Below are positions 7,771 to 52,639 of a DNA stretch of 64,000 nt, in pieces (within the stretch, counting starts at the first letter, position 1; the number at the start of each line of letters is the position of its first letter). A program made the translations under genes and the position numbers. The DNA comes from Lepidodermella squamata (taxonomy: Eukaryota > Animalia > Gastrotricha): positions 1,922,001 to 1,986,000 of the forward strand of contig JBLDXI010000033.1 of NCBI GenBank assembly GCA_047495785.1, written 5' to 3'. The notes under the pieces were generated by a model. It saw only the letters and a program-made list of their open reading frames with translations. It ran no database searches and had not been told where the DNA came from.

Positions 7771-8931
7771 AGATTTCATGTGAAAAAAAAGTTGGCAAAT
7801 TTCTAACCCCTTCTGTCACCCGTCACCAAGAAAATAGGAGACAGCTTCAAAGGAAGGCATATAGAACAATCAAAGGTTCTTTGATCTGGCCTTCAACATT
7901 ATGTTCAGTGTACAGTAAAGAAGAATTCGGGCGTTTCGACAAAGATTTGCACGGTGAATAGCTCCATCGTTAGAATCTATAAAATGAATAAACAATAAAC
8001 CGGGAAAGAGGACGCGGCACTGAGCACGTAAGTAAGAGATAAGCCGAGGGCGCAATAAGAGAGGGAGAGAGATAGAGAGGCTAAGAGAAACCAAGAAAGG
8101 CAGGAGAAACTGAACGCGGCATTTTTTGAATTTCAATTCTTAAATGATGCATAAACTTGACAATTGTTTTGTAATAATATCGATCTGATATGACTAATTA
8201 GTAATAAATAAATCTGGAAAAATTATATTTTACATTACCCGCGTAATTTTTTTCAACCAAAGTTTTCGTTTTCGTGAGTTTTCGTCAGTCTCAGCCAGTT
8301 TTCAGTCTCAGTTGGCTCGACTAATGTGCTTTCAAGCTGAGTGTTTGTCATGCTTCATGCTGAGTCATCTTTTTAATGGATGCCAATATTTTTCGTGTTG
8401 TTTTGCCCTATCCTCATCAGCCGGTCTATCAGGGACAACCATCAAAGATGACCCTCGTCTCCTCTGGACAGCTGTGAAAGGCTTGAGCCTGTGGAAAAAA
8501 TGTCGGGAGTGCGGAGCGCGACGCCTCTTCTTTAGATTTTCCTAGTTAACTTCCAGTTTAAATGAGCGTCATTAAGCATTGAGCAATCCGAATCGATGCC
8601 ATGGATGTAATTGTTTAATTCGTCTTAGCTTTCTTCTAAGCGTTAACCTCGTGATAGAAGATTTCATGCTCTTAACAGTTAACAGTGCGTTTATTTGCCT
8701 TGATTTACCTGAAACTGCGAAACAAGCGATAGCAGATAGCATAATGAAATAGGCTATTGATGTCGAAGTTTTATTTCCGGAATCTCTGTGTTTCTCTATT
8801 AGGAATTCATGACTTCTCGTAACTTGGCTTCATTTCTTCCCAGTATGACGGCTGGAGGACGGAGTAATTTGTCTGCTATTTATGTCGGTTTTTAGGTATT
8901 TTACAGTAATTGTCAGTTATTGATCTTTGAA

Positions 8932-9540
8932 ATGACAAGCATATTGACGACTTTGAAAGTTCTTCTGGTTGGAGATTCGAATGTCGGAAAATCAAGCATA
9001 TTACTAAGATTCACCGATGATACTTTCGATAATGAAAAATGTCCCACGATTGGAGTGGATTTTAAAGTAAAATTAATATCTCTTAATGGTACCAAAGTTA
9101 AGCTGGCACTTTGGGACACGGCTGGCCAGGAGCGCTTCAGAACACTAACACCTGCCTATTATCGTGGTGCTCAGGGTGTTATTCTTGTTTACGATGTTTC
9201 CAACGCTCAGTCTTTCCGTCAGTTAGAAGAATGGCTGCAAGAAGTCGATCGTTATGCCACTAAAGCGGACATTGTAAAAATGGTCATCGGCAATAAAATC
9301 GATAAAGACTCGAGCGAAAGGGTTGTTAGTCGCGAGGAAGGCCTCAGATTTGCACGCCGTCATCGAATGCTATTTCTAGAGACATCAGCCAAGACCGCAG
9401 TTGGTGTTCAAATGGCTTTCGAAGAACTCGTCGAAAAAATAATCCAGAATCCAACGCTTTGGCAAGCTGATGAAAATTCACAAGATCGCGTAAATGTGAA
9501 CGGACAAAATGAAAATGCATCTTACTGCAACTATTGTTAA
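8932..9540 (+). CDS. RAB18: Rab18 small GTPase (coding region intronless, 202 aa)
   Basis: LTTLKVLLVGDSNVGKSS, RFTDDTFD, TIGVDFKVK, WDTAGQERFRTLTPAYYRGAQG, GNKID, AFEELVEKIIQ and a C-terminal YCNYC prenylation motif. First ATG is at 8932. Confidence 0.96.
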   Translation: MTSILTTLKVLLVGDSNVGKSSILLRFTDDTFDNEKCPTIGVDFKVKLISLNGTKVKLALWDTAGQERFRTLTPAYYRGAQGVILVYDVSNAQSFRQLEEWLQEVDRYATKADIVKMVIGNKIDKDSSERVVSREEGLRFARRHRMLFLETSAKTAVGVQMAFEELVEKIIQNPTLWQADENSQDRVNVNGQNENASYCNYC

Positions 9541-13147: not shown

Positions 13148-16100
13148 TTATTCCAAAAAGCTGACGTTGACAGTAGGTCTCGTTGCTGTGAGTTCAGAGT
13201 CTTCAATAGCTTTGCATGCGATATTGGCTGCGATCTGAGGAAGGTCAACGGGTGAATCGAGCGTTTTGCGAGTGAGAGGAATATGGCGCTCGAAAATTTG
13301 AACCATCAGGCTCACGTAACTTGTGAGAGGTATAACAAAAAGCTGAATGCTTTTGTCGCGAATTGTTCGGAGAATGACGTCTTCAGTTTTTCCGCATGGA
13401 CATCCATCTGGATAGCTGTCACTGGCTTTGCCGTTGTAGAAATGGCGGCCGTGGGGAGGGCTATCTGAGATCAAAATGATCACTTTGGAGCAGCCATTAC
13501 GCCATTGCAACTTCGATGCAGCATCCAAGCCATCAAGAACTGCTTCGCACCCGTCTCCGCCACATTGCGTGCCGATTCTATCGACAAAAGACGAAGCCTG
13601 TTGAGCATCAACGAGTCCACTGCTTTCCATGACCACAGTGTCTTCGTAATGGTCACGATAAGCGACAACTGCAAATCTGATAGACTCAGTCGTGCCGCCA
13701 AGGGCGGCGACCTGGGGAGTTGTTTCGGAAATGATTCGCTTGATTGCAGTTTTGCACGCCGCAATGTATTCGGTCATTGATAACGTCGCATCGATGCAGA
13801 AGCAGAGATCCAATCCGCTGAACGCTGGCCGCGTGAAATCGTGGCAGTCAAACACGTGATCTCGGGCGAGTTCCGACTTTGAGTGCCAAGCTGGCTGGGT
13901 GCAATAGCTAACTTCACGGCCTGCATGTTCGCCACTCGGGCAGTAGAAGTTGCAAAGTTCAACGTCATCGTCTTCAGTCGGCATGGCCCAGTTTTGAACA
14001 CGCCAATAAGTTTGACACAGGTACTTATCGTAGACGACATCAGTATCTGGGTAAAAACGTTCCGAATCACTGCAGTGCAGAACCCCATTGCCATGGACTT
14101 TCTGACCGCATTCGTCGCCACCTCGGCATTCGAGCAGATGGTAATGGGCCCTGCCTTTGCGCTTGCATTGCTGGACACACGTTTCGGCCATCAACACATC
14201 ACCGGGTTCGTAGACGCGAAGCGCCTTCTTACCAGCAACCGTGTCTTCGACAGTGATGCGACCTTCGCTGGTTTTGGCGACGCAGTAACAGAATTCCATG
14301 TTGCGATGAGTGATCGTCAGGTGAGGACCGCGATGGCCGAAGGGTTCACGGCAAAACGATCCGCACTGCATGCAACGCTGGTCGCATTTATGCTCTGAAA
14401 TACACAGAAAAAATGTCTCAAAATGGTGAAATGAGGGCGTATCTTACCTTCTGATTTGCAATTATGGCAGTCATCATGGACCCATTCACCAGGTGGCAAG
14501 ACCTCCATGCACTTCTTGCGGTTGGAAACCGGTCGAATATACTGGTACTCGAGAGGGTTGCGAGGGTGGGCCAGGTAACGGGTCTCCTCGACGTAGTGAA
14601 CCTCGCAAATACCCTCAGCTTCACATTTCTTCGGGCAGCGATGCTCTTTGCCGCACAAATGAAGCTTGACCCTACGAGTTGGACTGGCTGTGATCGAAGG
14701 GTCCATCTCAAAAGTTGGATCGTCGATTTCAATAGCCGTGTCATCATGGTCGTGATCACCAGTGCAAGGCCCGCCGCAGAAAATGCAACGTTTCGGGCAA
14801 TGCTTCTCGTTACAGCGGTGGTCTTCGTGCTTATCGACCAGCGTCTTCGAGCATAAATTAGGGCAGTACTGGCACGTAGCTGTGCATTGATGGGTCGACG
14901 AACATTTGTGACTAGCAGGATTCCCGTGACCAGCGGCGTACATGCAACGGCTAGCACAGGTTTCAGTTTCACACCTCTCGGGGCAATCATGCTGCTCCTT
15001 GTCGCAAATGTGATTGCCATCAGCGTGACCAGCAGGGTGCTTACACGGCATCGATAGGTCATCAACGGCGCAGATAGTGCATATATCGTCACATCCTATA
15101 GCATAAAAAACGATTTAACATCGAAATTGGCAACAGAGATAAGAAACTTACGATGGTTGGTGGTACAGGAACACTCCAGAAGCTTCTCAATTTTAGCCAG
15201 TTCGGCTTTCAACTTGGAATGCTGTTCGTTGGCATCGACCAAAAATCGAAGATGACTCATCCTCGAGATGAGTGAAATTTCCTGAGCTTCAAGCAGGGCA
15301 AGAATCGGCGCGATCACATCGGCAGTTCTAACATCGACGTACGCTTTCAGCTCTTCCTCGATTTCGCAGATTTGGGAAGCAAGGGTCTTTTTGTCAGCTC
15401 GAATCGCTTTGATTTCATCATTTGTTTCGTTGATCTGAACATCGATTTCCAGATAGACCAACAACGCCTCGGCTTCAGACTTCCACTCGTTGAATGCGGC
15501 GGAAATGGCCTCTTTCGCGAACTTGAAGGATTCAGCAATATCGATTTGTCTCTTCAAATCTTCGAGCTTGTTCGACAATGACGAAGCCTTCGTTTTCAAC
15601 AGCATCAACTGGTTTCCGTTAAATTGGGGCAAACGCAGCTTGCTTTCAACATCTTTCAGCAACGTTAAATTTTGTTCAAGATCAGCAACTAGCGTGCTTT
15701 TTTCTTCAGAAATCAGTTCGATTTCGGCTTTTATGATCTGATGATAAGCCTCGTCGTAAACTTCAGTCACAACAGGGACAGGGTTTTCGGCAGATTTCAG
15801 CTGCTGTTCCAAATCAGTTTTCTTCGACTGTAGAGACTCGACTTTCTCCCGGACAGCCTTCAGGGCGGTTTCGGTGACCTCTTCATCATCGGTATCCACC
15901 TTAAATTTCTCATATTTTTCCAGCTTTTCAGTTTGAGTTTGCAGGCGTCGAGTGACACTTTTCAGCTGTTGTTTCAACTCATCAACATTGGCGGAAATTT
16001 GTGATATCTCACTCGGCAAAGGCGACGTAGCTTGTTGCGGAATCATGATGAAGTCCGACGTGTCAGTATTCAGCTCAATTATGCTGCTGTTGTCCTCGGG

Positions 16101-19100
16101 AAACGGTGTAGATGAATCACGGCATTCTGAAGGCTGAGCCGCTTGTAATTTCGATAAACGCACGTCTTCCGCAGCCAAGCGCTTCGATTCATCCACAACA
16201 GCTGCCCAACGCTCGCGAATTTCCGCGATTTTTTCTTCGAAATATCGTTTGCCGTTACGCAGATTCTCGACACACGTTTCGTAGCCTGCTAACTCGTGTC
16301 GGGCAAAAGCGTGTTTCTCCGCAAGTTCGTTTGCCTCAGTAACCCGAGATTTGATCAACTCGTCAATTTCTTCGAGCAATACGGAACAGCTTCGATAACC
16401 GTCGAAGTGACTCTTGAGCTCTGAAAGCTCGATGAACGACTCATTGACCCGCTTATCAACCTGTGTGATTGAGTCGAGCCAAGTAGCACAGGCGCTGAGT
16501 CTCTTTTCAAGCTCCACTGGTAACGAATCAGCTCCAAACAATGTCGTGAAATCGAAAAACGAACGATGTAAACTGCTGGCGAGGGTGTTTTCCAACATCA
16601 GCGGTTTCAAATGTTCGCAAATGCGCAGTAGAAGATGGGCTTTCCGCTCGGGGTAAGGCAGGGCGAAATCAGCTCCACTTTCGTCCTCGTCCAGAGCTGC
16701 TTTCAACTCCGCGAGCTTCGTCATTTTCACAGCCTCTTCGGCTTGTTTTTCACTAGCTAACGATTCAAGGCGGTTGAGGCGTTGCTCCAGCTCGCTTTTC
16801 GAGATTGCATCATTCAACTCCTTCTCATGAGCGAATTTCGATTTCACAACTTCATCGAATTCAATCTTTGCGGTAGCGAGTTCTTCTTCGAATTCGGCTA
16901 TCATGAGCTGGTCATCAGGGGGCAATTTAGTCTTCAGCTCCTTGATTCGTGATTCAATCTTGACTCGATTATCGAAATTGGCCTCGTTATGGCCCTTTCT
17001 TTCAACGCATTTCAGCTGACACTTCGAGCAGTTGTTCAGGCAAAGAGCAAACTTGTTACCAAGGCTTCGGATTTTTTCGAGAACGCCGGTTTTGAAATTT
17101 TTCAGCTCTTCCGCATTGAGAACTCGATCCAATGAGCTAGCTTCGTTCATGGCGAAGTCCTGCAGAATTCCGATTCGCTGTGAGACAAATGTGCCGAGAA
17201 GTTCGTTGAAACCGATCCAAGCTTCGTTGTACTCAGCTTTTGCCACAGCTGGATCACAGGTTCCGAAATATCGGCTCGAAAGTTCGCGAGAGATCGATTC
17301 ATAAGCAATGTTGTGCTCAGATGGCTCTTCCTGTAGCTGGAATGTCACCTCGGTTTGAGCGATTGTAATTTCATCGTCGCAGCCGGGCTTTTTGAAAGTG
17401 CAAACTTCCGAGGTGCTGGTCTTGCTCATGTCACCCCAGGCCGCCATTATACGACTTTCGGCTTGGAAAATTTTAACCCGCTTGACATGCTCATCGCCAG
17501 CCTGCTCGTCGTCACGGTTCACCTGAAGCAGGACGATCTTCAGCGACTGCAGCAGCGTCATAGCATCCGGCCAACGGTTCGGCGGCAAACCGTACGTGCG
17601 GCTCAAATCATCGAAAAACGACTGCCTCAAGTCGTTCAACTCGTTGAGGAAAACATCTCGATTAGTGTAGCTGTTCAAGCACTGCAGGGTGATGGATTTG
17701 CTGAAAAGCCTGGACAAGAACTGATGATCGCCCTTTTGATTAAGCTGGACGATATTTCGCTCGAATTCCTTAGTGGCCTGTTCGTCCTCTTCAGAAGCAA
17801 CATCGCGAACAGCCATGAGGAGGAATCCTCGGAAGTAATTTTTGCCCTTCACTCGATCGACCGTGTTGTTCAGATCAGAGAAAAGTCGGGTCAAATGGCG
17901 GTTGAAAGCAAGGTCTTGGTTCAGAATCGTGATATCGGAAACAGCAGAAAGGACCGTAAGCAACTTGACTTCTTCCAACTCGTTGCGACTGATGCTGAAA
18001 AGACCCTCGCAATCCAGGATGACGAAATCGTGCTCGCTGTTGTCGTGATCGGAAATCAGTCGAGCGTAGCTGATCCAAATACCGTCAGTGCAACGAGTAG
18101 CTGCCACGCTGAACCTGGTTCCAAACAACCGGTTAAGCAGGTAGCTTTTTCCCGAAGATTGGCGGCCGATGATGCTGATGATTTTGATCGGACGGCCGTT
18201 GGCGAAGGTGGAAAGAATGCTCTCGAGATGGCCAAACGTGAGGCGATCCGCAAGATTGGCGATATCAGACGCGACGTCAGTGTTGCTAAACTGATGGCGT
18301 TTCCCATCAACAAGTGGAACGACATTGTTGTCTTCAATCGTGCCTAAAAAAAAATAAAAAATAATGTTATTTGAAATGCGAAGGTTATATCCAACGAATT
18401 AAGGATACATTTTCTATAAAGCCGATTAGGCTAACGATATTAATCAGGTCACTCCCAAAAAATAAATAAAAAACAATAAAATCAAAACGTATTCACTAAC
18501 CAAATTTCACCAAATAATTTCAACTTGTTCAACTTACATATGTGGAGAGGAACACGCGAAAGAAGAATAGCTCTTAGATGGCAGCTTTTCATAACGCAGT
18601 CCGACCAGCTAATCTTGAACTTTTCCAACAACTCGACTGAAATCGTGAGCTTGGGCGAAAAGGTTCGAAGGTACGATCGCAGAGCAACGTCGAATTTTTC
18701 GATTGAAGATCCAGCAGGCAAGACCAGGCGATAATCCACCTGCTCAGGGGATCCAATAAACCGAGCTTGGGGGCCGTATTTCAGGAAACTGGCGTAAACG
18801 ATATCGATAATCGGATTGCCGCGATATATTTCCTTGCTAGATTTCGAGTCGGAAACAGCACGCAGAGAAACATCGGAACAAAGACCGGTGAAAATATAAC
18901 ATGAAACCGCGTCTTTCTTGTCATCGTTTTGTTCGATCGCAGTCAAATAAACATTGGCATTATCGGCGAAGACTTTTACAGCTCGGCAACGCGTTGTGGG
19001 CAGCGATTTCAACAAGGTCAGATTCGGGTCGTACAAATCGATCGATGAGTCACTTCGCAGCACAAAGAAAGACGTGTTTTTCGTCACATGGACGCTTTTG

Positions 19101-21469
19101 TAAATCTCGCCATTTTTCGCTCGCAACTTCAGCTTCTTCAACTTTTTGCCGTTATTTTCACTCGGGCAAAGTTCCATGACGTCACGCTTGATCAAATCGA
19201 CGTTGTAAAGGTTACCTTGCTCAGTAAGCAGTAACATTTCTTTCCTCCCTGGGTAGATAGCAGCTGAAGCGACTTTGCCACGAACCGAATCAGATATATT
19301 GACAGTTTGCTTTTGATTGAACTTTGGAGAGTCGTTTTGAGAAAATTCGAACAGCACAACCTCCTTGTCATCGTAAATTACGCCCATCAGCGCCGTGTCC
19401 GTTGACTTCTCGCCAGCATCGTAGCAGAACAAGAGCCGATCGCTTGACCACGTTTTCACGTTTTTCAACTCGTTGTTGTTAGAAATGGTGACAGTTATGA
19501 CGTTTTGAGGCAAGCGGTCACACTTGAGTGACGCGATGAACAGCTTGCCGTTCCATAGCGCGTAACACGAAATCACGCGAAGACTGCGAATATAGTCATC
19601 TGAAAGCGATTCCTCAGATTTTTTGCCCCAGCTGAATGCTTTGGTATTGAGAATGCTATTCCGCACGGAGACTGGCAAAGCCTTTGCAAATACCTGAAAA
19701 AGAATTTTCACATTTGTACAAAGAATAAACCCAATATTATGAAAGCAAGCAACATTTTGCAGAATTAGAAAATTTTAGGAAACTTCGAGAGCTTACGCGT
19801 ATTCTTAAAAATTTCAAGTGGGTATAAAACAATATTTACCGAGAAAAACCCGATGGGAAAAGTTTTCACGATTCCGGTATTTTTCCGTTCCCGTCGACGT
19901 TCCCGGAACCACAAATTTTATGCAAGCCCAATTATTTAATAAAAAATGAAATAATAATCGATGTTCTTCGGAGATATTTTTGCTTGTTTGCAAAATTCGA
20001 GAGGCATTTTATAAACAAGTTCTTACCTCGCTATTAATTTCCGAACTCCAGTTGAGAGGCGAATACGTCATCGCTTCGTATTCTCCTTCGTTAGTTTGAA
20101 CAACATTGAGAACGCACGGGGTGATTTTTAAAACGCAGCTCGTCTTCTTGTTGCGTTGATTTGAGATGATCGCCGACTTGCATTCAGCAATCAAATCCAG
20201 CGCAGCTTTAGCCACAACTTCACATTTTCTCGTTAGAAGCTCGTGGGATCGGGATTCGTTGTAGATTCGATAAACCTCTTGGCGAAAGGTTTGGAGCGAA
20301 CACTCTCTTCCCAAATCCAATTTTTCGAAAAAGAAGTTTGCAGTGCTATCGACAAAATCGCGCAGAACTAGTTTGGGTTCCCATGAAATACAGTTCTTAT
20401 CGCTGTCATACGAATACGAATTGAGAATTGCATGAAAAAACTGTTCGACCATAAATTCGATCAGAGATTGGGCATTTGGGCCATCTTCATGAAGTTCGCC
20501 GTAGCCAAACATGCCGGTAAAACGATGCCAAAGAGATGGCTTCTGGTTTCGAAGGGAACTATTGACTTTGCCCAAGATCTGCTTCAAGCAGTAAGACAAC
20601 TGACCATCACAATCACGAATTTTTCGCTGAAAGGAGACGTGGTCCGATGCGATTCGTTTCATGCACTCCGGCGAAAGCTCATCGCAGAAAGGTTTCAAGC
20701 TGTCCAAATTAGAGCTCTTCAGCTGGCGAAGCAGAATAGGGGCAATGTTGCTTAGAACAGCGTTCACGTCCAAATGTTTCGCAGTGGCAGCTGAGTCGGG
20801 AACTTCGCAGTGCAGAAAGAATTTACTGCCGTTGTCGTTGAAAACCAGGCGACGCAATGCATTTTCTCCCAGCTCTCGTGTAAGCAAGTCGAACGTAGTT
20901 TTCAGACCCAGTTCTGTTATTTCGCTCAGAGTTTTGCGGTCTTCTAATTTGAACATCGCACGTGAGTGAGCAACCGAGGAGAACGGATTTTTCGGGCCAG
21001 GTGAGAATGAATCCACGATTTCGCGACTTGGACATAGCAAAATAGTGGGGGAGGCATCTTCGAGGTATCGGAATAGCGTGACTAATATATGCTCCTTATT
21101 GAAATTCTCTTGTTGATGCATGAATTCCGCACCAGCATCAACCAACAAAAGAACCTTTGAACCTTTGACCAACGCGTAAAACGAGCCGTATTTCGAATTA
21201 CCAGCCGGTAGAGTGATTTCGAACCGAGATACATCTGCCTCTTCAACTTCTTCGAGATTCGCATCGTTATCTTGAGCAAGAATTTCGTGAGCAGTAGAGA
21301 CGATCGAGTTACGGTCGCCGAATAAAGCCAACACTTTTGCATCCGACAACAAAGCTATTCGGCGTTGCAACTGATTCAAATCGATTAGGTTGACGCCAAC
21401 CTGTTCGAAGGAACTCTCGGCGCTGGTTACCAACTCTCCAGTGAAAGGTTGGTAAATGTGAACGCTCAT
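13148..21469 (-). CDS. giant multidomain GTPase, copy A (~2,561 aa): N-terminal domain, putative beta-propeller, GB1/RHD3-type GTPase, long coiled coil, Cys/His repeats, VWA
   Basis: Exons 21469-20027, 19693-18538, 18343-15152, 15095-14448, 14394-13148; all GT-AG, total 7686 nt, open frame throughout. GTPase motifs G1 GRQSSGKS, G2 RCTDGIW, G3 DCEG, G4 AVRD. VWA motifs DLCFCIDATLSM, RFAVVAYRDH, GGDGCEA, SDSPPHG. Confidence 0.88.
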
Positions 21470-22654: not shown

Positions 22655-25600
22655 TCAGTCGAAGTCCATAGCAGCGGTATTGACTCGACGTGTGGCCGTC
22701 AATTCGGCATCTTCGAGAGCTTTGCAAGCGATGTTTGCAGCCAACTCTGGCAGATCCAGCGCAGATCCAAGTTCTTTTCGAATCAAAGGAATGTGGCCCT
22801 CAAAAACCTTGATCATTCGATTGACGTAGCTTGTCAAAGGAACGACATGGTACTTGATATGTTTGCCTTTCATTTCACCCAAAACCGACGCTTCGTTCAT
22901 ACCACACGGGCAACCACCAGGGTGATCATCGCCTGCATCGCTGAACTGCCGACCATGAGGTGGGGCATCCAAGATGTGAATTAGTAGTCGAGTGCAACTA
23001 TCGCGCCAGTTAAGCTTATTGACAGCATTGAGCCCATCAAGAACCGCCTCAGGTCCATCTCCTCCGCCCATTGCTCCGATCTTATCGACAAAGGCCGAGG
23101 CTTGATCGCTAGTCGTCAATGGGATTGATTGCAGCAAATTAGCTCCATCGCAGTGGTCACGGTAGGCAACGACTGCGAAACGGAGAGAAGAGACATTGCT
23201 GCCGTATCTGGCGACTAGAGGGGCACTTTCAGCGATAATTCGTTTGATGGCGCTTTTACATTGAGCGATAAAGGAGGCCATCGAGCCGGTCGCGTCGAAG
23301 CAGAAACACACGTCCATACCATTGAAAACAGCCTTCGAAAAGTCGTGGCAATCGAACCCATGGTCTTTAGCGAGTTCCGATAGCGTGTGCCAAGCTGGCA
23401 GGGTGCAGAATTGCGGCTCTTTCACATCATGCTCTCCACTTGGACAATAGGCGTTACACAAGTTGATTGAGTCGTCATCCGTTGGCATGGCCCAATTTTT
23501 GATTTGCCAATATTTCTCGCAAAGGTATTTGTCATAGACCACGCTGGTGTCTGGGTAAAATCGTTCGTGTTCTTTGCAGTGAACAACGCCACTTTCGTAC
23601 AACTTTTCGCCACAGTCGTCGCCACCTCGGCATTCGAGCAGATGGTAATGGGCCCTGCCTTTGCGCTTGCATTGCTGGACACACGTTTCGGCCATCAACA
23701 CATCACCCGGTTCGTAGACGCGAAGCGCCTTCTTACCAGCGACGGTGTCTTCGACAGTGATGCGGCCTTCGCTGGTTTTAGCGACGCAGTAACAGAATTC
23801 CATGTTGCGATGCGTGATCGTCAGGTGAGGACTGCGATGGCCGAAGGGTTCACGGCAAAACGATCCGCATTGCATACAGCGCTGATCACATTTATGCTCT
23901 GAAACACAGAAAAAATGTCCCAAAATGGTGAAATGAGGGCGTATCTTACCTTCTGATTTGCAATTATGGCAGTCATCATGGACCCATTCACCAGGTGGCA
24001 AGACCTCCATGCACTTCTTGCGGTTGGAAACCGGTCGAATGTACTGGTACTCGAGTGGGTTTCGAGGGTGGGCCAGGTAGCGAGTCTCCTCGACGTAGTG
24101 AACCTCGCAAATGCCCTCGGCATTACACTTCTTAGGGCAATTATGCTCCTTGCCACATAAGTGAAGCTTAACCCTAGGAACAGGACTAGCTACTGCAGCA
24201 GATGAATCGATCTCGAAAAAGGGATCATCGATTTCGATGGTAGTTTCATCGTGGTCGTGCGCACCAGCACACGGGCCACTGCAGAAAATGCAGCGTTTCG
24301 GGCAGTGTTTTTCGTTACAGCAATGGTCATCATGAGCTTCGATCAGCGAGCTCGTGCAAGTGTTGGGGCAATAACGGCACGTGGCCGTGCACTGGTGGGT
24401 AGACGCGCACTTGTGACCGGCAGGGTTTTCGTGACCATTAGCGTACATGCATCGATTTTTGCAACTTTCGCACTTGAACGGGCAGTCATGCTGCTTCTTG
24501 TCGCAAATATGGCCACCTTCAACGTGCCCTGCTGGGTGTTTACACGGAATTTCGAATCTGTCATCGCAGCAAATGTTGCAAATTTCATCACATAGATGGT
24601 TTGTCGTACAAGCACATTCGAGCAGCTTCTCAATTTTATCCAGCTCGGTTCGCAATTTCACATGCTGTTCATTCGCATCGACCAATTCTTGAAGGCGGAT
24701 AATATCAAAACGAAGCAATTCTTCGCGGCGTTCAACTTCAGCAAACTTCGGAGTAAGTTCGTCGAGATTCTGGGCATCAGATAGCAATTCGACTTCCGAC
24801 TCAAGTTCGCGAGCTTGAGAGGATAGTGTTGATTTCTCGGCTTCTACGGCTTTCAGTTCTTCTTTCAACGACTTCCATTGAACTTCCATCTGCAAGCATT
24901 TGATAATTGCATCAGCTTTTGGCTTCCAAATGATCAAAGCAGCGTCGAAAATATCACGCACGGGCTTCATCGCTTCAATCACGCCAGTATCTCGTTTCAG
25001 ATCATCAAGTTTCCGAGATATGTTCGACACTTTGCCTTTCATCACATTCAACTGATAAATTCCAAAACGAGGAGCAGAAAGTTGCTTCTCAACAGATCGA
25101 AGCTTCGCCGTTTCTTCAGTAACCGAAACCGATAGATCAGATGACTTTTTATTCATTTCGGCCAGTTGAGTCTTGATGCTCTCGTAGTAGGCTCGGTCGA
25201 ACTCCTCCACAAGATCGTGGTGACGTACCGTCAACTTTGACGATGACAACTGGCTCTCGAGCTTCTCCTTTTTATCAGCAAGAGATTTGATTTTCTCCTC
25301 GAGAGCACTGATTCTCAATTCAGTGACTTGCTCTTCATCAGAATCGATGCCATCAGCCTTGTATTTCTTCAATTTCTCGGTTTCTTTCTCAAAGCGTCGA
25401 GTCACAGTGTCGAGTTGCTTCTGCAATTCTTCCTCGGCTAGAACCAGCTGCGGACTTTTCGACGGGGGCGGTTCACAAGGCGCTTCCGATTCTTCAGAAA
25501 CAAGGCAGAAATCCATCAAATCATTTTGAATTCCGTCGATTTCAATGATTCCACTGCTGTCACCGCTACTTGGAATCGTTGGAGTGCCGCTACTGGGGAA

Positions 25601-28600
25601 TCTTTGAGTTCGAGTCGCCTCTAGTTTCGAGAGACGGGCTTCTTCAGCAGAAAGTCGTTCGATTTCCGCATTCAATTTACTGCCATCGTCTCGAGCAGTA
25701 GCAATCGACATTTCCAGCGATAGCTTCTGATTTTTCAAATTTTCAACTGTTGCTACTACGTCGTCCAAATCTTTTTGAGCAGCGTTCAACTTGACAGTGA
25801 CTTCTTGCATCTCATGGTCGTTGCCACCCAGGAGTTTGTCGCATTCCTCAAGGGCACGCCTGCAATTTTGATAGCCTTCGTAGAAACGCTGCCACTCAAT
25901 ATACTCCAGGTAGGGTTCGCAAAGCTCGCGATTCCCGCTATCAGCAATCGCGTCAAACCAGGCAGCGCAATCCAGGAGAAGTTGCTCCAGCTTAACGGGC
26001 GAGGAATCTGGGGACAGGAAAGACGTCAGCTCAGAGAATGACTTCCTCAGACTAGCAACAACGCTCGGTTCTATAATCAAGGGTTGCAGCTGGTTTGTGA
26101 TTTCAGAGAACAAATCTTGTTTTTGTTCAGCAACAGGCATTTCTGTCGACCCTTCGCTGGTCAGCTGTTCGATTTTCGCCGATTTTTCCCGCTCTTCAAT
26201 TTCTTTTTGCAAAAGAACATCACCAATGCCTTTGAGACGAGTCAGCAAATCTTCCTTGGTCTTAGCTCGAGCTATCTCTTTTTCTAGGCTGAGCAGAACT
26301 TCTTTCGCCTCTTCGTGCTGGATCTTAGCGGTCGATAGCTGATCTTCGGTATCGGCCAGCCTCAACTGTAGATCAGCCGGCAGTTTGGATTTCAGCTCTT
26401 TGAGACGCTGCTCCAACTTCGTTCGAGTCTCGAATGTACCCTCGTTGTGGCCCTTTCTTTCGATGCACTTCAGATGACAAGAACTGCACTTGTTGAGGCA
26501 CAGCGCGAATCTAGAACCAAGCCCTCGAATTTTTTCTTCAATTCCAGTCAGGAAATTTTTTCGCTCTTCCAGCGATAGGAGACGGTCCAAGGAGCTGGCT
26601 TCATTCACGGCGTATTGATTCAAGATTTCAATGCGTTGATTCACGTAGCCGACAAGCAATTCGTTGAAACAACTCCACGTTTCGTTGTAAAGAGCCTTGG
26701 AAACAATCGGTTCTCCGCTGCCAAAAAATCGAATTTTCAGCTCTTTGAAAATGGTTTCAAAGGCGATTTCTTCGGAGTGATCATTGGGGTATTGGAAGCA
26801 GATATCTAGTTGGCCAACGCAGATTTCTTCAACGCTGCCTGGTTTGGTGACACGCGTAGCAGCTTCGGTGCCAGTTTTGCTCATGTTACCCCAGGCTGAC
26901 AAAATTCGACCTTCAGCCTGAAGCATTTTGATCCGCTTGACGTGTTCATCGCCAGCTTGCTCGTCGTCTCGGTTGACTTGAAGCAGGACGATCTTCAGCG
27001 ACTGCAGCAAGGTCATAGCATCCGGCCAACGCCTTTCCGGAACTCTGAATTTAAGGCTGTAATCTTCGAAGAAAGACTGGCGAAGGTTGTCAACTTCGTT
27101 CAAGAACACGTCGCGATTCGTGTAGCTATTCAAGCACTGGCGAATAATAGCTCGACTGAACAGCCGTGTCAAAAACTGATGATCACCGCGTTGGTTGAGC
27201 TGGACAATGTTTCGTTCGAACTCTTCAGCGCTTCGCTCGTCGTCCTCGGAAGCCACGTCTCTAATGGCCATCAAAAGGAAGCCGCCAAAGTAGTTCCTCC
27301 CTTTCACTCGGTCGACAGTGCTGTTCAGATCAGCAAACAAACGATTCAAATGACGACTGAAGCTGAGATCTTGGTTCAAAATCGTGATATCGGAAACAGC
27401 AGAAAGGACCGTAAGCAACTTGACCTCTTCCAACTCGTTGCGACTGATGCTGAAAAGACCCTCGCAATCCAGGAGGACGAAATCGTGTTCAGAGTTGTCG
27501 TGATCGGAAATCAGTCGAGCGTAGCTGATCCAAATACCGTCAGTGCAACGAGTAGCTGCCACGCTGAACCTGGTTCCAAACAACCGGTTAAGCAGGTAGC
27601 TTTTTCCCGAAGATTGGCGGCCGATGATGCTGATGATTTTGATCGGACGGCCGTTGGCGAAGGTGGAAAGAACGCTCTCGAGATGGCCAAACGTGAGCCG
27701 ATCCGCAAGATTGGCGATATCCGAAATTACTTCAGCGTTATTGAACTGGTGGCGTTTACCGTCGATCAGCGGGATGACGTTGTTCTCTTCAATGGTACCT
27801 GTAAATTATTAAGATTATAGTTTCCAGATACCTCTCTCAAGGCCGCTAAGTTTCAATTTAGTGATAGTCACAAAAATGCAAGTTCAACCCGTATAGACCT
27901 GACCTTGGATCGAGTAGGGAAAATTATTCTCTCAATGGATGTAACTTTTTCGCCGAATCTAAGTAATTAAAACTGCTACACCCGATGATGTGTGTTTAGG
28001 ACAATATGGGTTGAATACATGAATACAACCAAAATTTACAGCTGAAGCTAATTTACCAAATTAAAACGGTTACCAAAGTACAGCAATTAATTTCAGGAAT
28101 GAGCAATGTGAAAACGTACAGATATGAAGAGGAACGCGCGACAGCAAAATTGACCGCAAGTGTTTGCTGTTGGATTCACAGCTGGCCCATTTTATCGTCA
28201 AGCTCTCCAGCAGCTCAGCAGAAACTCTGCCAGTTAATTTCGTAGAGAAAGTTCGAAGGTAAGACTGGAAGTTCTTGTCGAAAGTTTCGAGTCCGGAAAC
28301 TCCAACAGGTACGACTAGCTTGTAATCAACGATTTCCGGTGAGCCAATGAAACGAGCTTGAGGGCCGTACTTCGTAAAGCTGGCATAGACAATATCGATG
28401 ATAGGGTTCCCACGAAAAGCCTTCTTCGCATCCGCCGAATCATCATCCACATTCTGAAAAGATACGTCAGAACACAAGCCAGGGAAAATGAAACTGGTCG
28501 CAGTGGTTTGCTTCGACTCATTCGAGTTCAAAACGGAAATGTAAATGTTAGCGCTATCGGAGAACAGTTTCATCGCCTGTGAGCGATTGGCCTCGATCGA

Positions 28601-30922
28601 TCTCAGCTTCGAGCAGTTATCATCGTAAAAATCGACGAACGAATCGCTTCTCAAAATGAAAAACGAGTTGTTTTTCGAAACATGAACGCTTTTGTAGAGT
28701 TCCCCATTTTTAGCCATCAGCTTTTTCTTCTCGATTTTCTTACCAGTGTTCAACTTTGGACAGATTTCAGTGAATTCTTTCCTCGCAATATCAACGTGAT
28801 AGAGGTTGCCATACTCGGCCAACATCAGAGCATGTTGACGACTGGGTAGCAGCGCTGCTGAAATGATTCGCCCGCGAACTTGGCCGGGAATGCCTGCAGA
28901 TTGCTTCTCAGCTGGTTTGAAGCCATCATGCTGGGACATTTCGAAGATAGTAATCGCGTCATCGTTAGAAATCACGGCCATCGCAACAGAATCTGTCGAT
29001 TTGTCGCCGCAGTCGAAAGCGAAGGTCAACTTGTCAGTGGACCATGCTTTAACAGCTCGGATTTCTTCTTGCGAAACCGTTGCCATTATAGTTAGGCCGG
29101 GTAACTTCGTGCAGCGAAGAAAAACGATGAACAGTTTACCGCTCCACAGAGCCACGCAATTTAAGATCTTGATGCTTTCGATGTAGCCATCAGGGACCAC
29201 GCCATTGCTCTCACCTCTGTGACAAGAATCTCGCTTGATCGACTTTTGGTAGCTGGTAGGCAGCAATTTGAAAAACGTCTGAAAACAGAAAAATTGGTCG
29301 TTGTAGCTAAATAGAACGCTCGTTTATGAATTTTATGAATTTGATTAATTTCAATTCTCATTTCTATTTACTAGATTTCTCTTTGCAATGCTGAGGGAAA
29401 ATGGCCAAATCGAGTAAAAAATATATTCAAGTTAATGAATTGATGGTAGTAGTTGCTGATAAAAGCCGAATAAGTTTTTTACCTCCGCATTCAATTCAGA
29501 GCTCCAGCTCAAGGACGAGTACGTCACAGCTTCAAATTGACCATCGTTGCTCTGCACGACCTTCATAGCACATGGAGTTAATCGCACCGACGCGGACGGT
29601 CTCTTCGTTTCCCTCTCATTCGAAATTGCCGTTTTGCAGTCTGCCAACATCTTTTTCGCCGCTTCGCCAACCTGAAGGCCGGCAGCGTTAAGAGTTTGGT
29701 GAAAGCGATGTTCGTTCAGTTCGATGTAGACACTTTGTACGACTTCGTGATGGGGCATGTCCCAGGTGTTGCTGTTCACCAGCATAGATGCGGCTTTTTC
29801 GGCGAATTCTCGCAAAATGGCTTTAGAATTCCACTTCACGGTGTAGTTTTCAACGTCATAGGACTCCAAAACTGAATGCACGACATGATTACACAGAAAT
29901 TCTGTCAGCGACTGAATATGGACGCCGTCAATATAGCTTTCCCCGGAGAAGAAATTGATTGCTCTGCTTAAAACACTTTTCTTCTGACGAGCTGCAAATG
30001 AGTCTCGTGATTTCGACAAAACGAAACGAACATCGCTGGAGAATCGATCACAGATACCGCGAATTTTATCGATAAAACGCCGATGCTCGTATTGAATTGC
30101 TTGGCAGCTGTCGCTGGATAGAGACTCAGCAGCAGCTTTCAGGTCACCGCAGATATAGGAAAAATTCAAATTTCTGAACAGCACCGGAATAATTTTGATC
30201 ACAATTTCCTTGGCATCGAAACTTGACGCATTCTTCTTCTCGGACTGGAGCGCGGCGTGCAAGAAATATCGAGAGCAATTTTCGTTGAAAATCAAGCGAT
30301 TTGCAGCATCTTCACCCAATTCTCGAGTGAGCAGATCGAGCGTGGTTCTCAGGGGCAATTCAGCGATTTCCTGGACACTTTTGCAATCCTCCAAACGGTA
30401 CATAGCACGATTGTGAGCGGTTGATGAGAAAGGATTTTTCGGGCCAGGAGAAAACGTATCGATTACTGCAATATCTGGGCAAAGCAGAATTGTCGGAGCC
30501 AAGTCCTCTAGGTATCGAAACAGGGTCACTAAAATGTGCTCTTTGTTGAATGAGTTTTGCTGCCGAAGAAAATCGGGGTCGGCGACTAACATCAACAGCA
30601 GCTTGCTTCCCTTTACCGCTGCGAAGAAACCGCCGTATTTACCATCAGTGATTTCAGGCAAATTCAGTTCTTCTTCCTCGATGTCTTCATCTTCCTCCAT
30701 GCTCTCCTTCTCTCCATCGTTTTCTTCGCTGAGAAGTTTTCGAGCGGTTTCTGTGACAGAATTTCGATCTCCAAACAGAGCAGCGACTTTCAAATTCGGT
30801 AGAGAGCCGATTTCGCGTTGAAGTTGGTTCAAGTCGTGCAAATTCACGGCGACCTGCTCGAAAGAACTTTCAGCACCCGTGACAACCTCGCCGATGAACG
30901 GCCGGTATAAATGTAGCCTCAT
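22655..30922 (-). CDS. giant multidomain GTPase, copy B (~2,563 aa), tandem paralog of copy A
   Basis: Exons 30922-29483, 29278-28120, 27798-23950, 23898-22655; total 7692 nt in frame. Its three introns match copy A in position and phase. Same G1-G3 motifs, G4 AIRD. VWA motifs DVCFCFDATGSM, GGDGPEA, LDAPPHG. Confidence 0.88.
27883..28015. mobile_element. putative MITE in intron 2 of copy B
   Basis: Imperfect 18-bp terminal inverted repeats: ttcaacccgtatagacct (27883-27900) versus the reverse complement of aggacaatatgggttgaa (27998-28015), 15/18 match. The ends resemble piggyBac-type TTAA-CCC termini. Confidence 0.35.
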
Positions 30923-32425: not shown

Positions 32426-34166
32426 TCACAGTTCGCCATGGTCGATAGTATCGGTCCAGAATGAATGATGTTCGATTGGCGGAGGCGGCACACTGCAAGC
32501 CGCCGGAGTCATGAAGTCCATTGCGTATTCGCAGCGATTAGGCTCAGAAACCGAGGTGATTTTGTTCTCGCCACCGCAGAGAATCTTCACGGTGATCGAT
32601 CGAGCCGGTCCATTCCAGCACGACTCGCCATGAGTATATGCTTGATAGGCGTGCTTATTGTCACCTTCCGCCCGCCACGCTTCAAATCGACCAAGATTTG
32701 TCTCGTGGTGGCCATGCTTCTGTTTCTGAGCAGCGCGGTCGAATGGGCACATCTTGTAAGTATACTCACGGTCATCCATCTCGAAACATTGGCCGCGAAG
32801 TGCGTAATACTCGCCGCTAGCACCGAAATCCGTGGCAGTAACGGAAACAAGGTCTGTGTACTCCCGATCAAGATCATCGTAGGCTTTACGAGCCTCCTCG
32901 TAAGTATTACGTGCCTGGGTGGTGAAAACGTGAAATCTTTACTAATTTAAGGAGGATTAATAAAACATACTTGATCTGCAGCTTCCATGAGTTTCTTTGT
33001 TTCCTCTGGGTATTCAGGCATTTTGAACTCTTCATCCTTCTTCTCTTCGTGGTGACGAGTATGATGAGGAGGACGAGTGAATTCGTTCATTCGCTCGTCG
33101 ATTTTCCTCTCCTCGTCTTCATCTTCCTCCTCCTCGCCGATAACAGTCGGTTCTGGCGCGGCTTCAGTTGTTGTCGAGGGTTCTGAGCCCGCTTTACGAT
33201 AGATTTCCTTGATATGAGGCCAGACTTTTTCGATGAAATGAGCGTGGTCAGCAGCACCGTCGGCTGGATCTTCCAGGTTCTCCCGAGCCTCGTCATCTGA
33301 AACAACACCGTCCCCATCAACGTCGAATTCAAGATGGGTTTGAATCTCTTGGAAAGTGATACGTCCATCCTTGTTTGTATCTAGATCTTCGAAAGCCTCC
33401 TCAGTCAAACGCTTCTGTTTTTCCTCTTCGAGGACCTTCTTCGTTTCCTCCCATTCTTTCTGGTGCTTGTCCTTCGCTTCACTTTCCAATTTCTCGACTT
33501 CCTCCTTCGTTTTCTGTAACCGCTGCTTCTCAGCATCAGCAGCCGCTCGTTCAGTTTCGATTTGCTTTAACCGCTCGCGTTTTTCGCCGATTTCGGTTTG
33601 ATATTTGGTGATGTAATCTTTGTACACTTGATGGCCTTGCTCCATGGTAGCCCGCTTCGCTTCGGCGGCTTCACGAGCAATTTTTCCGAGAGATTCGCAA
33701 GAGTTAGGACAGGGCGATGTGCCACCGGGTGTCAATTGCTCGTCACTGCCATCGCAGCAATCGCAAACACCGTCGTCGACGAACATTGAAGAGATATATT
33801 TTGGCCGAAAACCGACGTTAGGGCAGTAAAATTTTCCGTTGGGACAAGCAGAAGTGCCTAAGAATAAATTACAGGTTAATACAAGGGTTCCCATAAGTTC
33901 AAAAATATTCTAACCTGGTTCGTCGGAACCATCGGGACAGTCGCAGTAATCGTCATTAACATGTTCGAATGAGTAACTTTTAGACTTGTCAAAACACTGA
34001 AAAGGTTGGTCAGGCCTATATAGCGACAGTTCTGAAGAAAAACGTTTTCATCATTTGAAGATGATAATAATGATGCCAACTCACTTTGTTGAGCGACTCC
34101 TCGGGGTTTCAGCGATGCATTCGCATACGCTACTACAGCGAGCAACGTCAGTAATTTGAACTTCAT
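32426..34166 (-). CDS. PRKCSH: glucosidase II beta subunit
   Basis: Four exons. Signal peptide plus PRGV; [40 protein letters not shown]; EF-hands DTNKDGRIT and DVDGDGVVS; acidic tract; MRH domain EYTYKMCPF...CWNGPARS...EPNRCEY; C-terminal HGEL. Confidence 0.95.
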
Positions 34167-51700: not shown

Positions 51701-52639
51701 TCGAAGTCAAGCTAATCGATCTAGATCTAACCGCTCCTAGCAGCACATTACAGAAAAAGGGTGCCCCCATTCTGCGCTCAGCTAACTCGACAAAGGATGC
51801 TGAGGCGAAAAAAGACATTATCCGTGTAAAAGCTAGCGCTGATGGGAACATCGCGCTGTCTGATTTGCGGCCTAACACCAAGTACCGAGTTCAAGTCAGA
51901 GCTGTCGCGGAAACTGGCGCCAGCGAATGGTCTGATCCTATCATGATTCGGACAAGGAAGGAAAACTACGGAACAAGCTTAGAAGATGCGATGGCTGCAA
52001 TCTACGACGAATCGAGCTATTTCGAATCTATGCCGTTAATTGCTGGCTGTATCGTTTCGATTTTATTTGTCATCCTGATTTTCTCCGGCGTTGCGGCGTT
52101 CGTCATCATGTGGCGACGGCGCATTTCTCGGTCGATGGTACCTGCAGCAAGCAGTAGTCTGTCGCGAAGTTGCACCTCCGGCGGCACTTCGTCACCATCA
52201 TCTTCAACCGCCGCAGACGACGTGCAAGGTCGATGGAGGACGATTCCCCATTTCCTTCAGGTAAGCAACGTCGTTCTTCAAATCCTTACACCGAAACCTA
52301 ATTTATTTTCAAAATTTTTAGGAAATGAAGGGTGAAAGTATGATCTACACGACCCATGATGTGATTGGGCTGTGTGATTCTCCGCCTACGACATTCATGC
52401 CTCTTGGACATCCTGGTCATTCGATTCAGGTCAACACTGATAACAATCACAGCACTTGCTCATCAGCATCACCCGACAGCAACAACAGCAGCAGCGGCGG
52501 CATTGTTGGAGGTGGCCTCCTTAAAAAGGTCAATGCGCCAATGCCACCTCCGCGTCCGTTGCTGCGTCCTCCTCAACTTCAAGCTAAACCCGATCCTCGT
52601 AAAACAACATCGAATTCAAGATTTAACGCCAGGAAATAG
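48760..52639 (+). CDS. single-pass receptor (~1,135 aa): signal peptide, PAN/apple, EGF-like, kringle, 2-3 EGF-like, ~5 FN3, TM, short Ser/Pro-rich tail
   Basis: Exons 48760-48856, 48910-49206, 49266-49409, 49471-49758, 49941-50072, 50129-52260, 52322-52639 (3408 nt, in frame). PAN: CPGNDI..ECAEKC..CVGFTY..CLLKS. Kringle: YKG..SGAMCQPW..NFCRNP..PWCY. EGF: CPxGxxGxxC. FN3: LxPxTxYxVxVxA. TM: IAGCIVSILFVILIFSGVAAFVIMWRRR. Confidence 0.88.

What the first reader, a model, noticed from the sequence alone, without database searches (positions are those of the whole stretch)
15177..16988. ~600-residue coiled coil inserted inside a Cys/His module, implying a long antiparallel hairpin
Seen in both copies: CLNxCSxCxLKCxERKGH, then ~605 helical heptad-rich residues, then ECxCTTNHxC (B: ~24617-26446). 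The downstream repeats have the form CxxxCxxC...CxxxxGHxxxxHxC followed by HxC, so the two flanks look like halves of one repeat. Inference: the insert leaves and returns to the same metal-binding knuckle, forming an SMC/Rad50-like arm tens of nm long that projects from the GTPase body.
Basis: partly seen in the sequence, partly recalled or inferred. Interest (0 to 1): 0.75.

Follow-up and report, generated by a model that had tools for sequence, protein, structure and literature searches.

The report
Coiled-coil arm inside a zinc repeat
Two neighbouring animal genes encode giant GTPase proteins in which a roughly 600-residue helical stretch has been inserted into a three-residue loop of a zinc-binding repeat, and it very probably folds back on itself into a rod about 25-30 nm long, an SMC-like arm on an unstudied, possibly immune, protein family.

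Summary
In copy A (15177-16988, minus strand) 604 residues, and in copy B (24620-26446) 609 residues, separate C-x3-C-x2-C-x3-C-x5-H from C-x-C-x3-H-x-C.

In 24 homologues the two halves are contiguous, joined by 3-6 residues (19 in Anaeramoeba). In 26 others the gap is 342-972 residues. The contiguous natural unit scores as a true copy of the downstream Cys/His repeat. The tree suggests that the insert was gained later, and one gain is not rejected (AU p 0.31).

AlphaFold2 predicts long confident helices with a disordered 51-residue loop in the middle. The best structural matches are all intramolecular antiparallel coiled coils: MukB, condensin, Rad50, a Bacillus subtilis (Bs) Smc arm fragment, the dynein stalk and chemoreceptors. 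So the hairpin reading is supported, but only by prediction and topology. I had no coordinates, so contact between the two flanks was not measured.

The host protein is a ~2,560-residue VLIG/GBP-type GTPase with a Cys/His array and a vWA domain, in an unstudied family. The Cys/His array has no Pfam or PDB counterpart. Function is inferred only. The scan's notes already list this tandem pair and a further paralogue elsewhere in this genome.

The parts
13148..21469 (-). Gene A, whole coding span (several short introns), about 2,560 aa
   Evidence: tblastn of the 2,646-aa homologue P0001 is collinear from residue 1 to 2641; ORFs
22655..30922 (-). Gene B, tandem paralogue of A
   Evidence: tblastn with P0001 is collinear; one continuous 1,642-aa ORF covers the GTPase C-terminal half through to vWA
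16989..17042 (-). A: first half of Cys/His unit 0 (CLNNCSKCQLKCVERKGH)
   Evidence: C, C, C, C and H are invariant in 21 insert-bearing homologues
15177..16988 (-). A: 604-aa helical insert (the arm)
   Evidence: 38% identical to B, against 73% in the flanking domain
15153..15176 (-). A: start of the second half of unit 0 (ECSCTTNH). The closing Cys follows the intron.
15096..15151 (-). A: 56-nt GT..AG intron directly after TTNH, absent in B. It explains the apparent ORF break in A.
   Evidence: sequence read; splicing restores ...TTNH-R-CDDICTIC..., colinear with B; depth in run X1 drops in this bin
16005..16139 (-). A: Pro/Ser/acidic non-helical loop at the middle of the insert (insert residues ~284-328 of 604)
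   Evidence: sequence; proline cluster 286-325
26447..26500 (-). B: first half of Cys/His unit 0 (CLNKCSSCHLKCIERKGH)
24620..26446 (-). B: 609-aa helical insert (the arm)
24590..24619 (-). B: second half of unit 0 (ECACTTNHLC)
25454..25606 (-). B: disordered 51-residue loop at the far end of the arm (ORF aa 660-710; model residues 361-411, pLDDT 33-36)
23324..24589 (-). B: remaining Cys/His array (units 1-5 and a further Cys/His-rich region) up to the vWA domain
   Evidence: the homologous array in P0012 is modelled at pLDDT 86
27371..27667 (-). B: core of the GTPase domain (P-loop GRQSSGKS, TRCTDG, DCEG)
   Evidence: Pfam URGCP_GTPase 59.7 bits (cut-off 55), GBP 39.4, RHD3 42.4
17919..18203 (-). 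A: core of the GTPase domain
   Evidence: URGCP_GTPase 60.4 bits
23024..23311 (-). B: vWA domain (Pfam-matched part; MIDAS-like D-A-T-G-S)
   Evidence: VWA_4 32.2 bits, cut-off 27
13418..13810 (-). A: vWA domain
   Evidence: VWA_4 33.1 bits, VWA 27.7 bits

Best explanation
The 604/609-residue stretch is a lineage-specific insertion into a loop of the first unit of a tandem Cys/His (presumably zinc-binding) repeat array. In relatives that loop is three residues long and lies between the fifth ligand (His) and the sixth (Cys/His). The array belongs to a ~2,560-residue cytosolic protein with this order of parts: an N-terminal region of unknown fold, a VLIG/GBP-type GTPase, a helical domain, the Cys/His array, and a vWA domain. 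Both half-units keep all their ligands, so the unit still closes. The insert therefore leaves and re-enters at nearly the same point. It is predicted to fold back on itself as an intramolecular antiparallel coiled coil. The model shows a proximal two-stranded segment (~11 nm), a knob of three short helices on the outgoing strand, and a distal two-stranded rod (~15 nm). At the far end lie a disordered ~50-residue acidic/Ser/Pro loop and a small helical hairpin. The total reach is about 25-30 nm. The metal-binding unit acts as the clamp at the base. The arm's length is conserved between the paralogues (604 against 609 residues), while its sequence is the fastest-evolving part of the protein. My inference, which is not shown, is that the arm is a spacer or strut. 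It would hold a variable tip away from the GTPase/zinc/vWA body, or space the molecules in a GTP-driven assembly on a target surface, as GBP1 and GVIN1 coats do.
For: (1) Exact motifs and coordinates. (2) The loop length is bimodal in the family: 3-6 aa (19 in one case) in 24 homologues, against 342-972 aa in 26. (3) The contiguous unit 0 is recognised by a profile of units 1-3 (median 14.9 bits; composition-matched shuffles median -5.5, maximum 12.1). (4) All ligands of both halves are invariant in the insert-bearing proteins, and the sixth position alternates Cys/His as metal ligands do. (5) The same relative loop of unit 4 carries a variable ~20-45-aa expansion in nearly all aligned members, so this loop tolerates insertions. 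(6) AlphaFold2 of B aa 300-1100 gives helices at pLDDT 85-95 on both sides of a disordered loop at model residues 361-411. (7) The top Foldseek hits are MukB, Smc2/4, Rad50, the cohesin elbow, JetC and Smc5/6, and there is no parallel dimeric coil among the 50 listed. (8) VIA-align matches the dynein stalk (Z 12.3), the B. subtilis (Bs) Smc arm fragment 5nnv (Z 11.7; 229 of 231 residues; model 253-605), p85 iSH2 (rmsd ~3 A) and chemoreceptor 3g67 (213 of 213 residues). (9) The tree places all insert-less outgroups outside, and one clade of insert-bearers is not rejected. (10) The gene is real and expressed: a spliced contig exists in run X1, and the GTPase motifs and Pfam domains are intact.
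Against: No coordinates or PAE were available, so contact between the flanks and the register of the two strands rest on secondary structure and on the ranges of structural alignments. The flanking Cys/His part of the arm model is poorly modelled (pLDDT ~50-70). The alignment behind the model is shallow (21 sequences). Z scores of 11-12 are within what long helical models reach by arrangement alone (note). A sequence-only test for mirrored hydrophobic patterns gave no signal. The comparison of the short (342 aa) and long (635 aa) ciliate inserts was ambiguous. A monomer prediction cannot tell an intramolecular hairpin from strand exchange between two chains. Zinc binding is inferred from the Cys/His pattern and the cytosolic context only. 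No experiment or paper bears on function.
Confidence: 0.7

Rival explanations
1. The arm is intermolecular. The outgoing and returning helices of one chain pair with those of a second chain, either as a strand-exchanged antiparallel dimer (as in the TRIM coiled coil) or as a four-helix rod. The insert would then be primarily a dimerisation device.
For: Related large GTPases dimerise (GVIN1 and GBP, from 10.1101/2025.03.24.645074 read). A monomer AlphaFold run cannot exclude this. Several weaker VIA matches are oligomeric helical assemblies.
Against: The ends of the insert are tied together by a unit whose loop is 3 residues in relatives. This favours the two strands of one chain running side by side. 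High pLDDT was obtained for the monomer alone.
Confidence: 0.13
2. The insert is a compact, multi-helix globular domain, not an extended rod.
For: The outgoing strand has three short helices (model 185-250) and the returning strand has breaks at 445-451, 483-488 and 537-542. The arm could fold at these points, as the cohesin and MukB elbows do.
Against: There are uninterrupted helices of 103, 92 and 71 residues. A 231-residue SMC arm fragment and a 213-residue chemoreceptor hairpin align almost completely. The composition is Glu/Lys/Leu-rich with 3.5-residue periodicity.
Confidence: 0.1
3. The two Cys/His flanks fold independently, and the insert is a linear linker or a parallel coiled coil between two separate metal modules.
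For: Which ligands share a metal ion was not determined. The flanks are the least confident part of the arm model.
Against: Natural homologues join the flanks with 3 residues. That unit matches the repeat profile across the junction. All ligands are retained on both sides in every insert-bearing protein. The structural matches are antiparallel hairpins.
Confidence: 0.04

Closest known systems
SMC / MukB / Rad50 coiled-coil arms
   Same: A very long intramolecular antiparallel coiled coil leaves and re-enters one globular module and is interrupted by elbow-like breaks. These are the top Foldseek and VIA matches.
   Different: The base is a small Cys/His repeat unit, not a split ABC ATPase head. 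The far end is a disordered loop plus a mini-hairpin, not a hinge or a zinc hook. There is no sequence relationship (SMC_prok_B 21 bits against a cut-off of 567). In Rad50 the zinc sits at the tip and joins two chains. Here the metal module sits at the base of one chain.
Dynein stalk, PI3K p85 iSH2, chemoreceptor cytoplasmic hairpin
   Same: These are antiparallel helical hairpins inserted between or within globular modules as spacers or communication rods. They give the best VIA Z scores and the lowest rmsd.
   Different: They are shorter (about 10-20 nm) and have no metal-binding base. Their host proteins are unrelated.
VLIG / GVIN / URGCP and GBP / atlastin / RHD3 large GTPases
   Same: The G domain passes the Pfam cut-offs for URGCP_GTPase, GBP and RHD3. 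The proteins are giant and cytosolic, and the genes are tandemly duplicated. GVIN1 and GBP1 form coats on bacteria (10.1101/2025.03.24.645074).
   Different: GVIN1 is described with two LG domains and helical linkers, without a Cys/His array, a vWA domain or a coiled-coil arm. No function is known for the family found here.
NF-X1-type zinc fingers and TRIM (RING/B-box/coiled-coil) proteins
   Same: They share closely spaced Cys/His ligands in tandem. TRIMs combine zinc modules with an antiparallel coiled coil in innate immunity. Both resemblances come from my own knowledge.
   Different: No Pfam family matches the array even at E <= 10. There is no PDB match by sequence or fold. In TRIMs the coil follows the zinc modules and pairs between chains, and it is not inserted inside a zinc module.

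Membership tests
SMC/Rad50 superfamily | Split ABC ATPase head (Walker A at the N terminus, signature and Walker B at the C terminus) flanking the coiled coil | tested here: not met
   Pfam and NCBIfam on the 1,642-aa ORF: no SMC_N; SMC_prok_B 21 bits against a cut-off of 567, over the coil only. The flanks are Cys/His half-units.
SMC/Rad50 superfamily | Hinge domain or CxxC zinc hook at the apex of the arm | tested here: not met
   The middle of the insert is a disordered Pro/Ser/acidic loop with no hinge match and no conserved CxxC.
SMC/Rad50 superfamily | Long intramolecular antiparallel coiled coil | tested here: met
   Met in the AlphaFold2 model only. The top Foldseek and VIA matches are SMC-type arms.
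VLIG/URGCP-type large GTPase (dynamin superfamily, GBP/RHD3 branch) | G domain matching the family profile above its curated cut-off, with P-loop and DxxG | tested here: met
   URGCP_GTPase 59.7 and 60.4 bits (cut-off 55); GBP 39.4 and 38.1 (cut-off 21.1); RHD3 42.4 and 43.4 (cut-off 42.4). GRQSSGKS and DCEG are present.
vWA domain proteins | vWA profile match and MIDAS-type D-x-[ST]-x-S | tested here: met
   VWA_4 32.2 and 33.1 bits (cut-off 27); VWA 27.7 bits (cut-off 23.8) in A. The sequences are DATGS in B and DATLS in A.
NF-X1-type zinc finger (PF01422) | Match to the family profile | tested here: not met
   No Pfam hit at E <= 10 for the Cys/His arrays of the window protein and three homologues.
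TRIM/RBCC | RING and B-box domains N-terminal to the coiled coil | tested here: not met
   No RING or B-box hit in any piece.
Zinc-binding repeat (generic) | Bound zinc, with defined ligand sets | not testable with these tools
   Only the invariant Cys/His pattern and the Cys/His exchange at one position are seen. No coordinates were returned and the models contain no metal.

The most novel reading that the evidence does not exclude
The family is an undescribed kind of cell-autonomous defence GTPase. In one branch (this animal, rotifers, ciliates) a ~30-nm zinc-clamped coiled-coil arm was grafted onto the protein. The arm would set the spacing of a GTP-driven coat or cage around a target, or would capture a target through its fast-evolving tip while the vWA domain locks on. 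In effect this would be an SMC-like reach-and-hold device reinvented on an immune GTPase.
Probability: 0.15. Interest if true: 0.8.

Novelty: new variant of a known kind. Interest (0 to 1): 0.55.

Why it matters
Long intramolecular coiled-coil arms are known from only a few machines, such as SMC/Rad50, the dynein stalk and chemoreceptors. Here the family supplies its own natural controls: close relatives with a 3-residue loop at the same site, and arms from 342 to 972 residues. That makes the role of the arm directly testable by swapping or deleting it. The host family (VLIG/GBP-type GTPase, an unmatched Cys/His array and a vWA domain) is unstudied, is spread patchily over protists, fungi, rotifers and this animal, and is tandemly duplicated here with a fast-evolving arm. 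These traits fit a conflict or immune role but do not prove one. The Cys/His array has no structural or profile counterpart, so it deserves a solved structure in its own right.

Tried and rejected
(1) Palindromic autocorrelation of the hydrophobic pattern, meant to find a mirror centre in 20 inserts, gave no peak near the midpoint and only noise. It is uninformative, not negative.

(2) I used the short ciliate insert (P0033, 342 aa) against its 635-aa relative as a natural truncation. Both ends align, but the low-complexity middle aligns ambiguously, so symmetric shortening could not be shown.

(3) A first alignment that mixed insert-less and insert-bearing proteins (A1) put the first half-unit of the insert-less proteins in the wrong place. 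I did not use it for folding.

(4) I considered whether copy A is a pseudogene, because its ORF stops after TTNH. I rejected this: a 56-nt GT..AG intron sits there, and the frame continues colinear with B.

(5) Attempts to name the Cys/His array all failed: Pfam at E <= 10, a profile search against PDB sequences, Foldseek PDB, VIA wide and Atlas.

(6) Four literature searches found no description of this family or of a coil inserted in a zinc module. The conflict-systems paper PMC7159879 does not mention these GTPases.

Full report
**What is at the coordinates**

The finding lies in one of two tandem paralogous genes on the minus strand. Gene A spans 13148-21469 and gene B spans 22655-30922. 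Both are collinear over their whole length with a 2,646-residue metagenomic homologue, P0001 (tblastn).

In B a single 1,642-codon ORF runs from the second half of the GTPase domain to the stop codon. In A the same region is cut by short introns. The apparent end of the A ORF just after ...ECSCTTNH is a 56-nt GT..AG intron (15096-15151). Splicing it restores ...TTNH-R-CDDICTIC..., which matches B. A second A-specific intron (14395-14447) is spliced out in a contig of public run X1 and is present in run X2. Copy A is therefore transcribed and processed.

The neighbouring genes are ordinary animal genes: fn3/DSCAM-like, Fringe-like, a Rab-type GTPase and a genuine SMC.

**The observation**

The coordinates are exact.
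- In A, CLNNCSKCQLKCVERKGH (16989-17042) is followed by 604 residues (15177-16988) and then ECSCTTNH.
- In B, CLNKCSSCHLKCIERKGH (26447-26500) is followed by 609 residues (24620-26446) and then ECACTTNHLC.

The downstream array consists of units of the form C-x3-C-x2-C-x3-C-x5-H-x3/5-H-x-C-x3-H-x-C.

The insert is Glu/Lys/Leu-rich. Its 3.5-residue hydrophobic periodicity exceeds that of shuffles (z 4.8 and 3.8). The vWA domain also reaches z 3.7, so this is a signature of amphipathic helices and not proof of heptads.

A word-indexed search and an exhaustive HMMER search with the Cys/His-vWA part found the family in several places:
- rotifers (Adineta, Rotaria)
- Paramecium
- Anaeramoeba
- a basidiomycete
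- a conifer record
- many metagenomic proteins

I measured the distance between the fifth ligand (His) and the [C/H]-x-C-x3-H-x-C motif in every long hit. The result is sharply bimodal.
- In 24 proteins it is 3-6 residues, or 19 in Anaeramoeba. Examples are CKKTCRNCLRECTKQKDH-LDN-CNCSTDHLC (P0012) and CGCKCSICFWRCALQKGH-SSD-HSCMGNHAC (P0017).
- In 26 proteins, including the two in the window, it is 342-972 residues.

A profile built from units 1-3 of the insert-less proteins scores their contiguous unit 0 at a median of 14.9 bits. Composition-matched shuffles have a median of -5.5 and a maximum of 12.1 in 960 trials. The profile alignment runs straight across the insertion point.

In the 21 aligned insert-bearing proteins, all ligands on both sides are invariant. 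The sixth position alternates between Cys and His, as a metal ligand would. The same relative loop of unit 4 carries a variable 20-45-residue expansion in nearly all aligned family members. This loop is evidently a permissive site.

**History of the insert**

I built a tree from the C-terminal 540-650 residues, leaving the insert out. All insert-bearing proteins fall in one region of the tree, together with one insert-less clade. Two further insert-less clades, including the fungal and plant-like sequences, lie outside. The label needs one to two changes on the tree. An AU test does not reject a single clade of insert-bearers (p 0.31). The root was placed at the midpoint only. On that reading the 3-residue loop is ancestral and the arm was gained later.

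Between paralogues A and B the insert is 38% identical, against 73% in the preceding GTPase/helical domain and 88% at the second half-unit. Its length is nevertheless kept (604 against 609 residues). Across the family only the first ~20 and last ~10 residues of the insert stand above background.

**Shape of the insert**

AlphaFold2 on B residues 300-1100, with 21 insert-bearing sequences, gave a mean pLDDT of 76. Model numbering is ORF residue minus 299.
- Outgoing strand: helices at 82-101, 110-180, 185-204, 209-221, 229-250 and 258-360.
- Middle: a disordered loop at 361-411 (pLDDT 33-36).
- Returning strand: helices at 412-444, 452-482, 489-536, 543-634 and 641-688.
- Most helices have pLDDT 85-95.

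- The eleven Foldseek hits with E <= 0.001 are MukB, condensin Smc2/4, Rad50, the cohesin elbow, Wadjet JetC and Smc5/6. They are followed by PrgA, an Smc arm fragment, chemoreceptors and dynein heavy chains. None of the 50 listed is a parallel dimeric coil.
- The best VIA-align matches are the dynein stalk (Z 12.3) and the B. subtilis (Bs) Smc arm fragment 5nnv (Z 11.7; 229 of 231 residues; model 253-605).
- p85 iSH2 aligns ~148 residues at rmsd ~3 A (model 289-564).
- Chemoreceptor 3g67 aligns 213 of 213 residues (model 256-600).

These ranges imply that helix 258-360 pairs antiparallel with 489-~600, giving a distal rod of about 15 nm. Helix 110-180 then pairs with ~600-688, giving a proximal segment of about 11 nm. 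That proximal pairing is my inference from the remaining lengths, because the listed alignments barely cover it. The three short helices at 185-250 would form a knob or elbow. The disordered loop plus helices 412-482 would sit at the far end. At 0.15 nm per residue the reach is roughly 25-30 nm.

In both paralogues the Pro/Ser/acidic loop lies at the middle of the insert: residues ~284-328 of 604 in A and ~281-331 of 609 in B.

There are caveats. TM-scores are low, as expected for long rods. Z scores of 11-12 can arise from helical arrangement alone (note). The Cys/His flanks in this model have pLDDT of only ~50-70.

**Why the hairpin reading holds apart from the model**

If unit 0 still folds as in relatives, which the invariant ligands argue, the two ends of the insert replace a 3-residue loop. 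They must then lie within about 1-1.5 nm of each other. A ~600-residue, almost wholly helical chain that starts and ends at the same point can only be a hairpin-type rod or a bundle. Uninterrupted helices of 103, 92 and 71 residues argue for the rod.

**The host protein**

The G domain has GRQSSGKS, TRCTDG and DCEG. It passes the Pfam cut-offs of URGCP_GTPase (59.7 and 60.4 bits; cut-off 55), GBP and RHD3. The C terminus is a vWA domain with a D-A-T-G-S motif.

The Cys/His array of an insert-less relative folds confidently (pLDDT 86). It has no counterpart anywhere I looked:
- no Pfam hit at E <= 10
- no PDB sequence match with the family profile
- best Foldseek E-value 0.99
- no VIA match with Z >= 2 among 48,161 chains
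- in the ESM Atlas, only the family's own basidiomycete members

The N-terminal ~900 residues have no Pfam match. Language-model neighbours suggest a beta-propeller for the second exon, which is a lead only.

**Mechanism**

Shown:
- the insertion site
- the conservation of both half-units
- the bimodal loop length
- helical content in the prediction
- expression of copy A

Predicted: an antiparallel two-stranded arm with an elbow and a disordered tip.

Inferred: the metal-binding unit clamps the base of the arm. The arm acts as a spacer or strut that either presents a rapidly changing tip or spaces the molecules in a nucleotide-driven assembly. The only functionally studied VLIG-type GTPase, human GVIN1, forms a coat on cytosolic Burkholderia, as GBP1 does on Gram-negative bacteria (10.1101/2025.03.24.645074). 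That protein has no arm, no Cys/His array and no vWA domain, so the analogy is weak.

**Comparison and novelty**

The arm works like an SMC/Rad50/MukB arm or a dynein stalk. It is not a member of those families: it has no ABC head, no hinge or hook, and no profile match. Relative to Rad50 the metal is at the opposite end, at the base within one chain, and not at the tip between two chains.

Four literature searches found no description of the family or of a coiled coil inserted in a zinc module. I rate it a new variant of a known kind.

The scan's own notes already list the tandem pair, a tip motif, and a further paralogue elsewhere in the genome. I did not rely on them for any conclusion.

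Noticed in passing
window 15096-15151 and 14395-14447 (minus strand): Copy A has two short GT..AG introns (56 and 53 nt) inside the Cys/His array. Copy B lacks both, and its ORF is continuous from ~27805 to 22655. This means intron gain or loss since the tandem duplication. The 53-nt intron is spliced out in a contig of run X1 and retained in X2.
   Followed up: partly
window 16005-16139 (A) and 25454-25606 (B): The disordered loop at the far end of the arm keeps two short hydrophobic motifs between the paralogues (S-x-IIE-[LI] and DF-x-[ML]-[IV]) in otherwise unalignable Pro/Ser/acidic sequence. They may be a short linear binding motif. The closest homologue, P0001, has no comparable loop.
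   Followed up: no
alignment A3, unit 4 (window B about 24130-24290): The loop of Cys/His unit 4 that corresponds to the insertion site of unit 0 carries a variable 20-45-residue, partly acidic expansion in nearly all aligned family members (in B: DHDETTIEIDDPFFEIDSSAAVASPVPRVKLH). The same loop has therefore been expanded twice.
   Followed up: partly
P0012:1678-1974 (model mc10592d2c2c3): The Cys/His array is modelled with pLDDT 86 but has no match in Pfam, in PDB by sequence, in Foldseek PDB or in VIA wide (no Z >= 2). It may be an undescribed metal-binding fold.
   Followed up: partly
window 59060-61072 (minus strand): A genuine SMC gene fragment (SMC hinge plus the C-terminal part of SMC_N) lies in the same window. 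It is unrelated to the finding and is a coincidence worth knowing when 'SMC-like' is searched for here.
   Followed up: no
window 8920-9540 (+), 32947-33894 (-), 50119-52335 (+), 53369-54319 (-): The neighbours are typical animal genes: a Rab/Ras GTPase, a glucosidase II beta-like protein with an EF-hand, an fn3/DSCAM-like protein and a Fringe-like protein. The giant GTPase genes are therefore embedded in an animal genome and are not contamination.
   Followed up: partly
window 28070-29266 and 29432-30922 (minus strand): The N-terminal ~900 residues have no Pfam match. Language-model neighbours of the second piece are all beta-propellers (score 0.90). Those of the first piece are ORC3-like (0.87). 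Both are leads only.
   Followed up: no
window 14119-14637: Contigs of both public runs differ from the window by about 3% in this stretch (8-16 changes per ~500 nt) but are identical elsewhere, for example at 15004-15453. This could be a divergent haplotype or a mis-laid paralogue.
   Followed up: no
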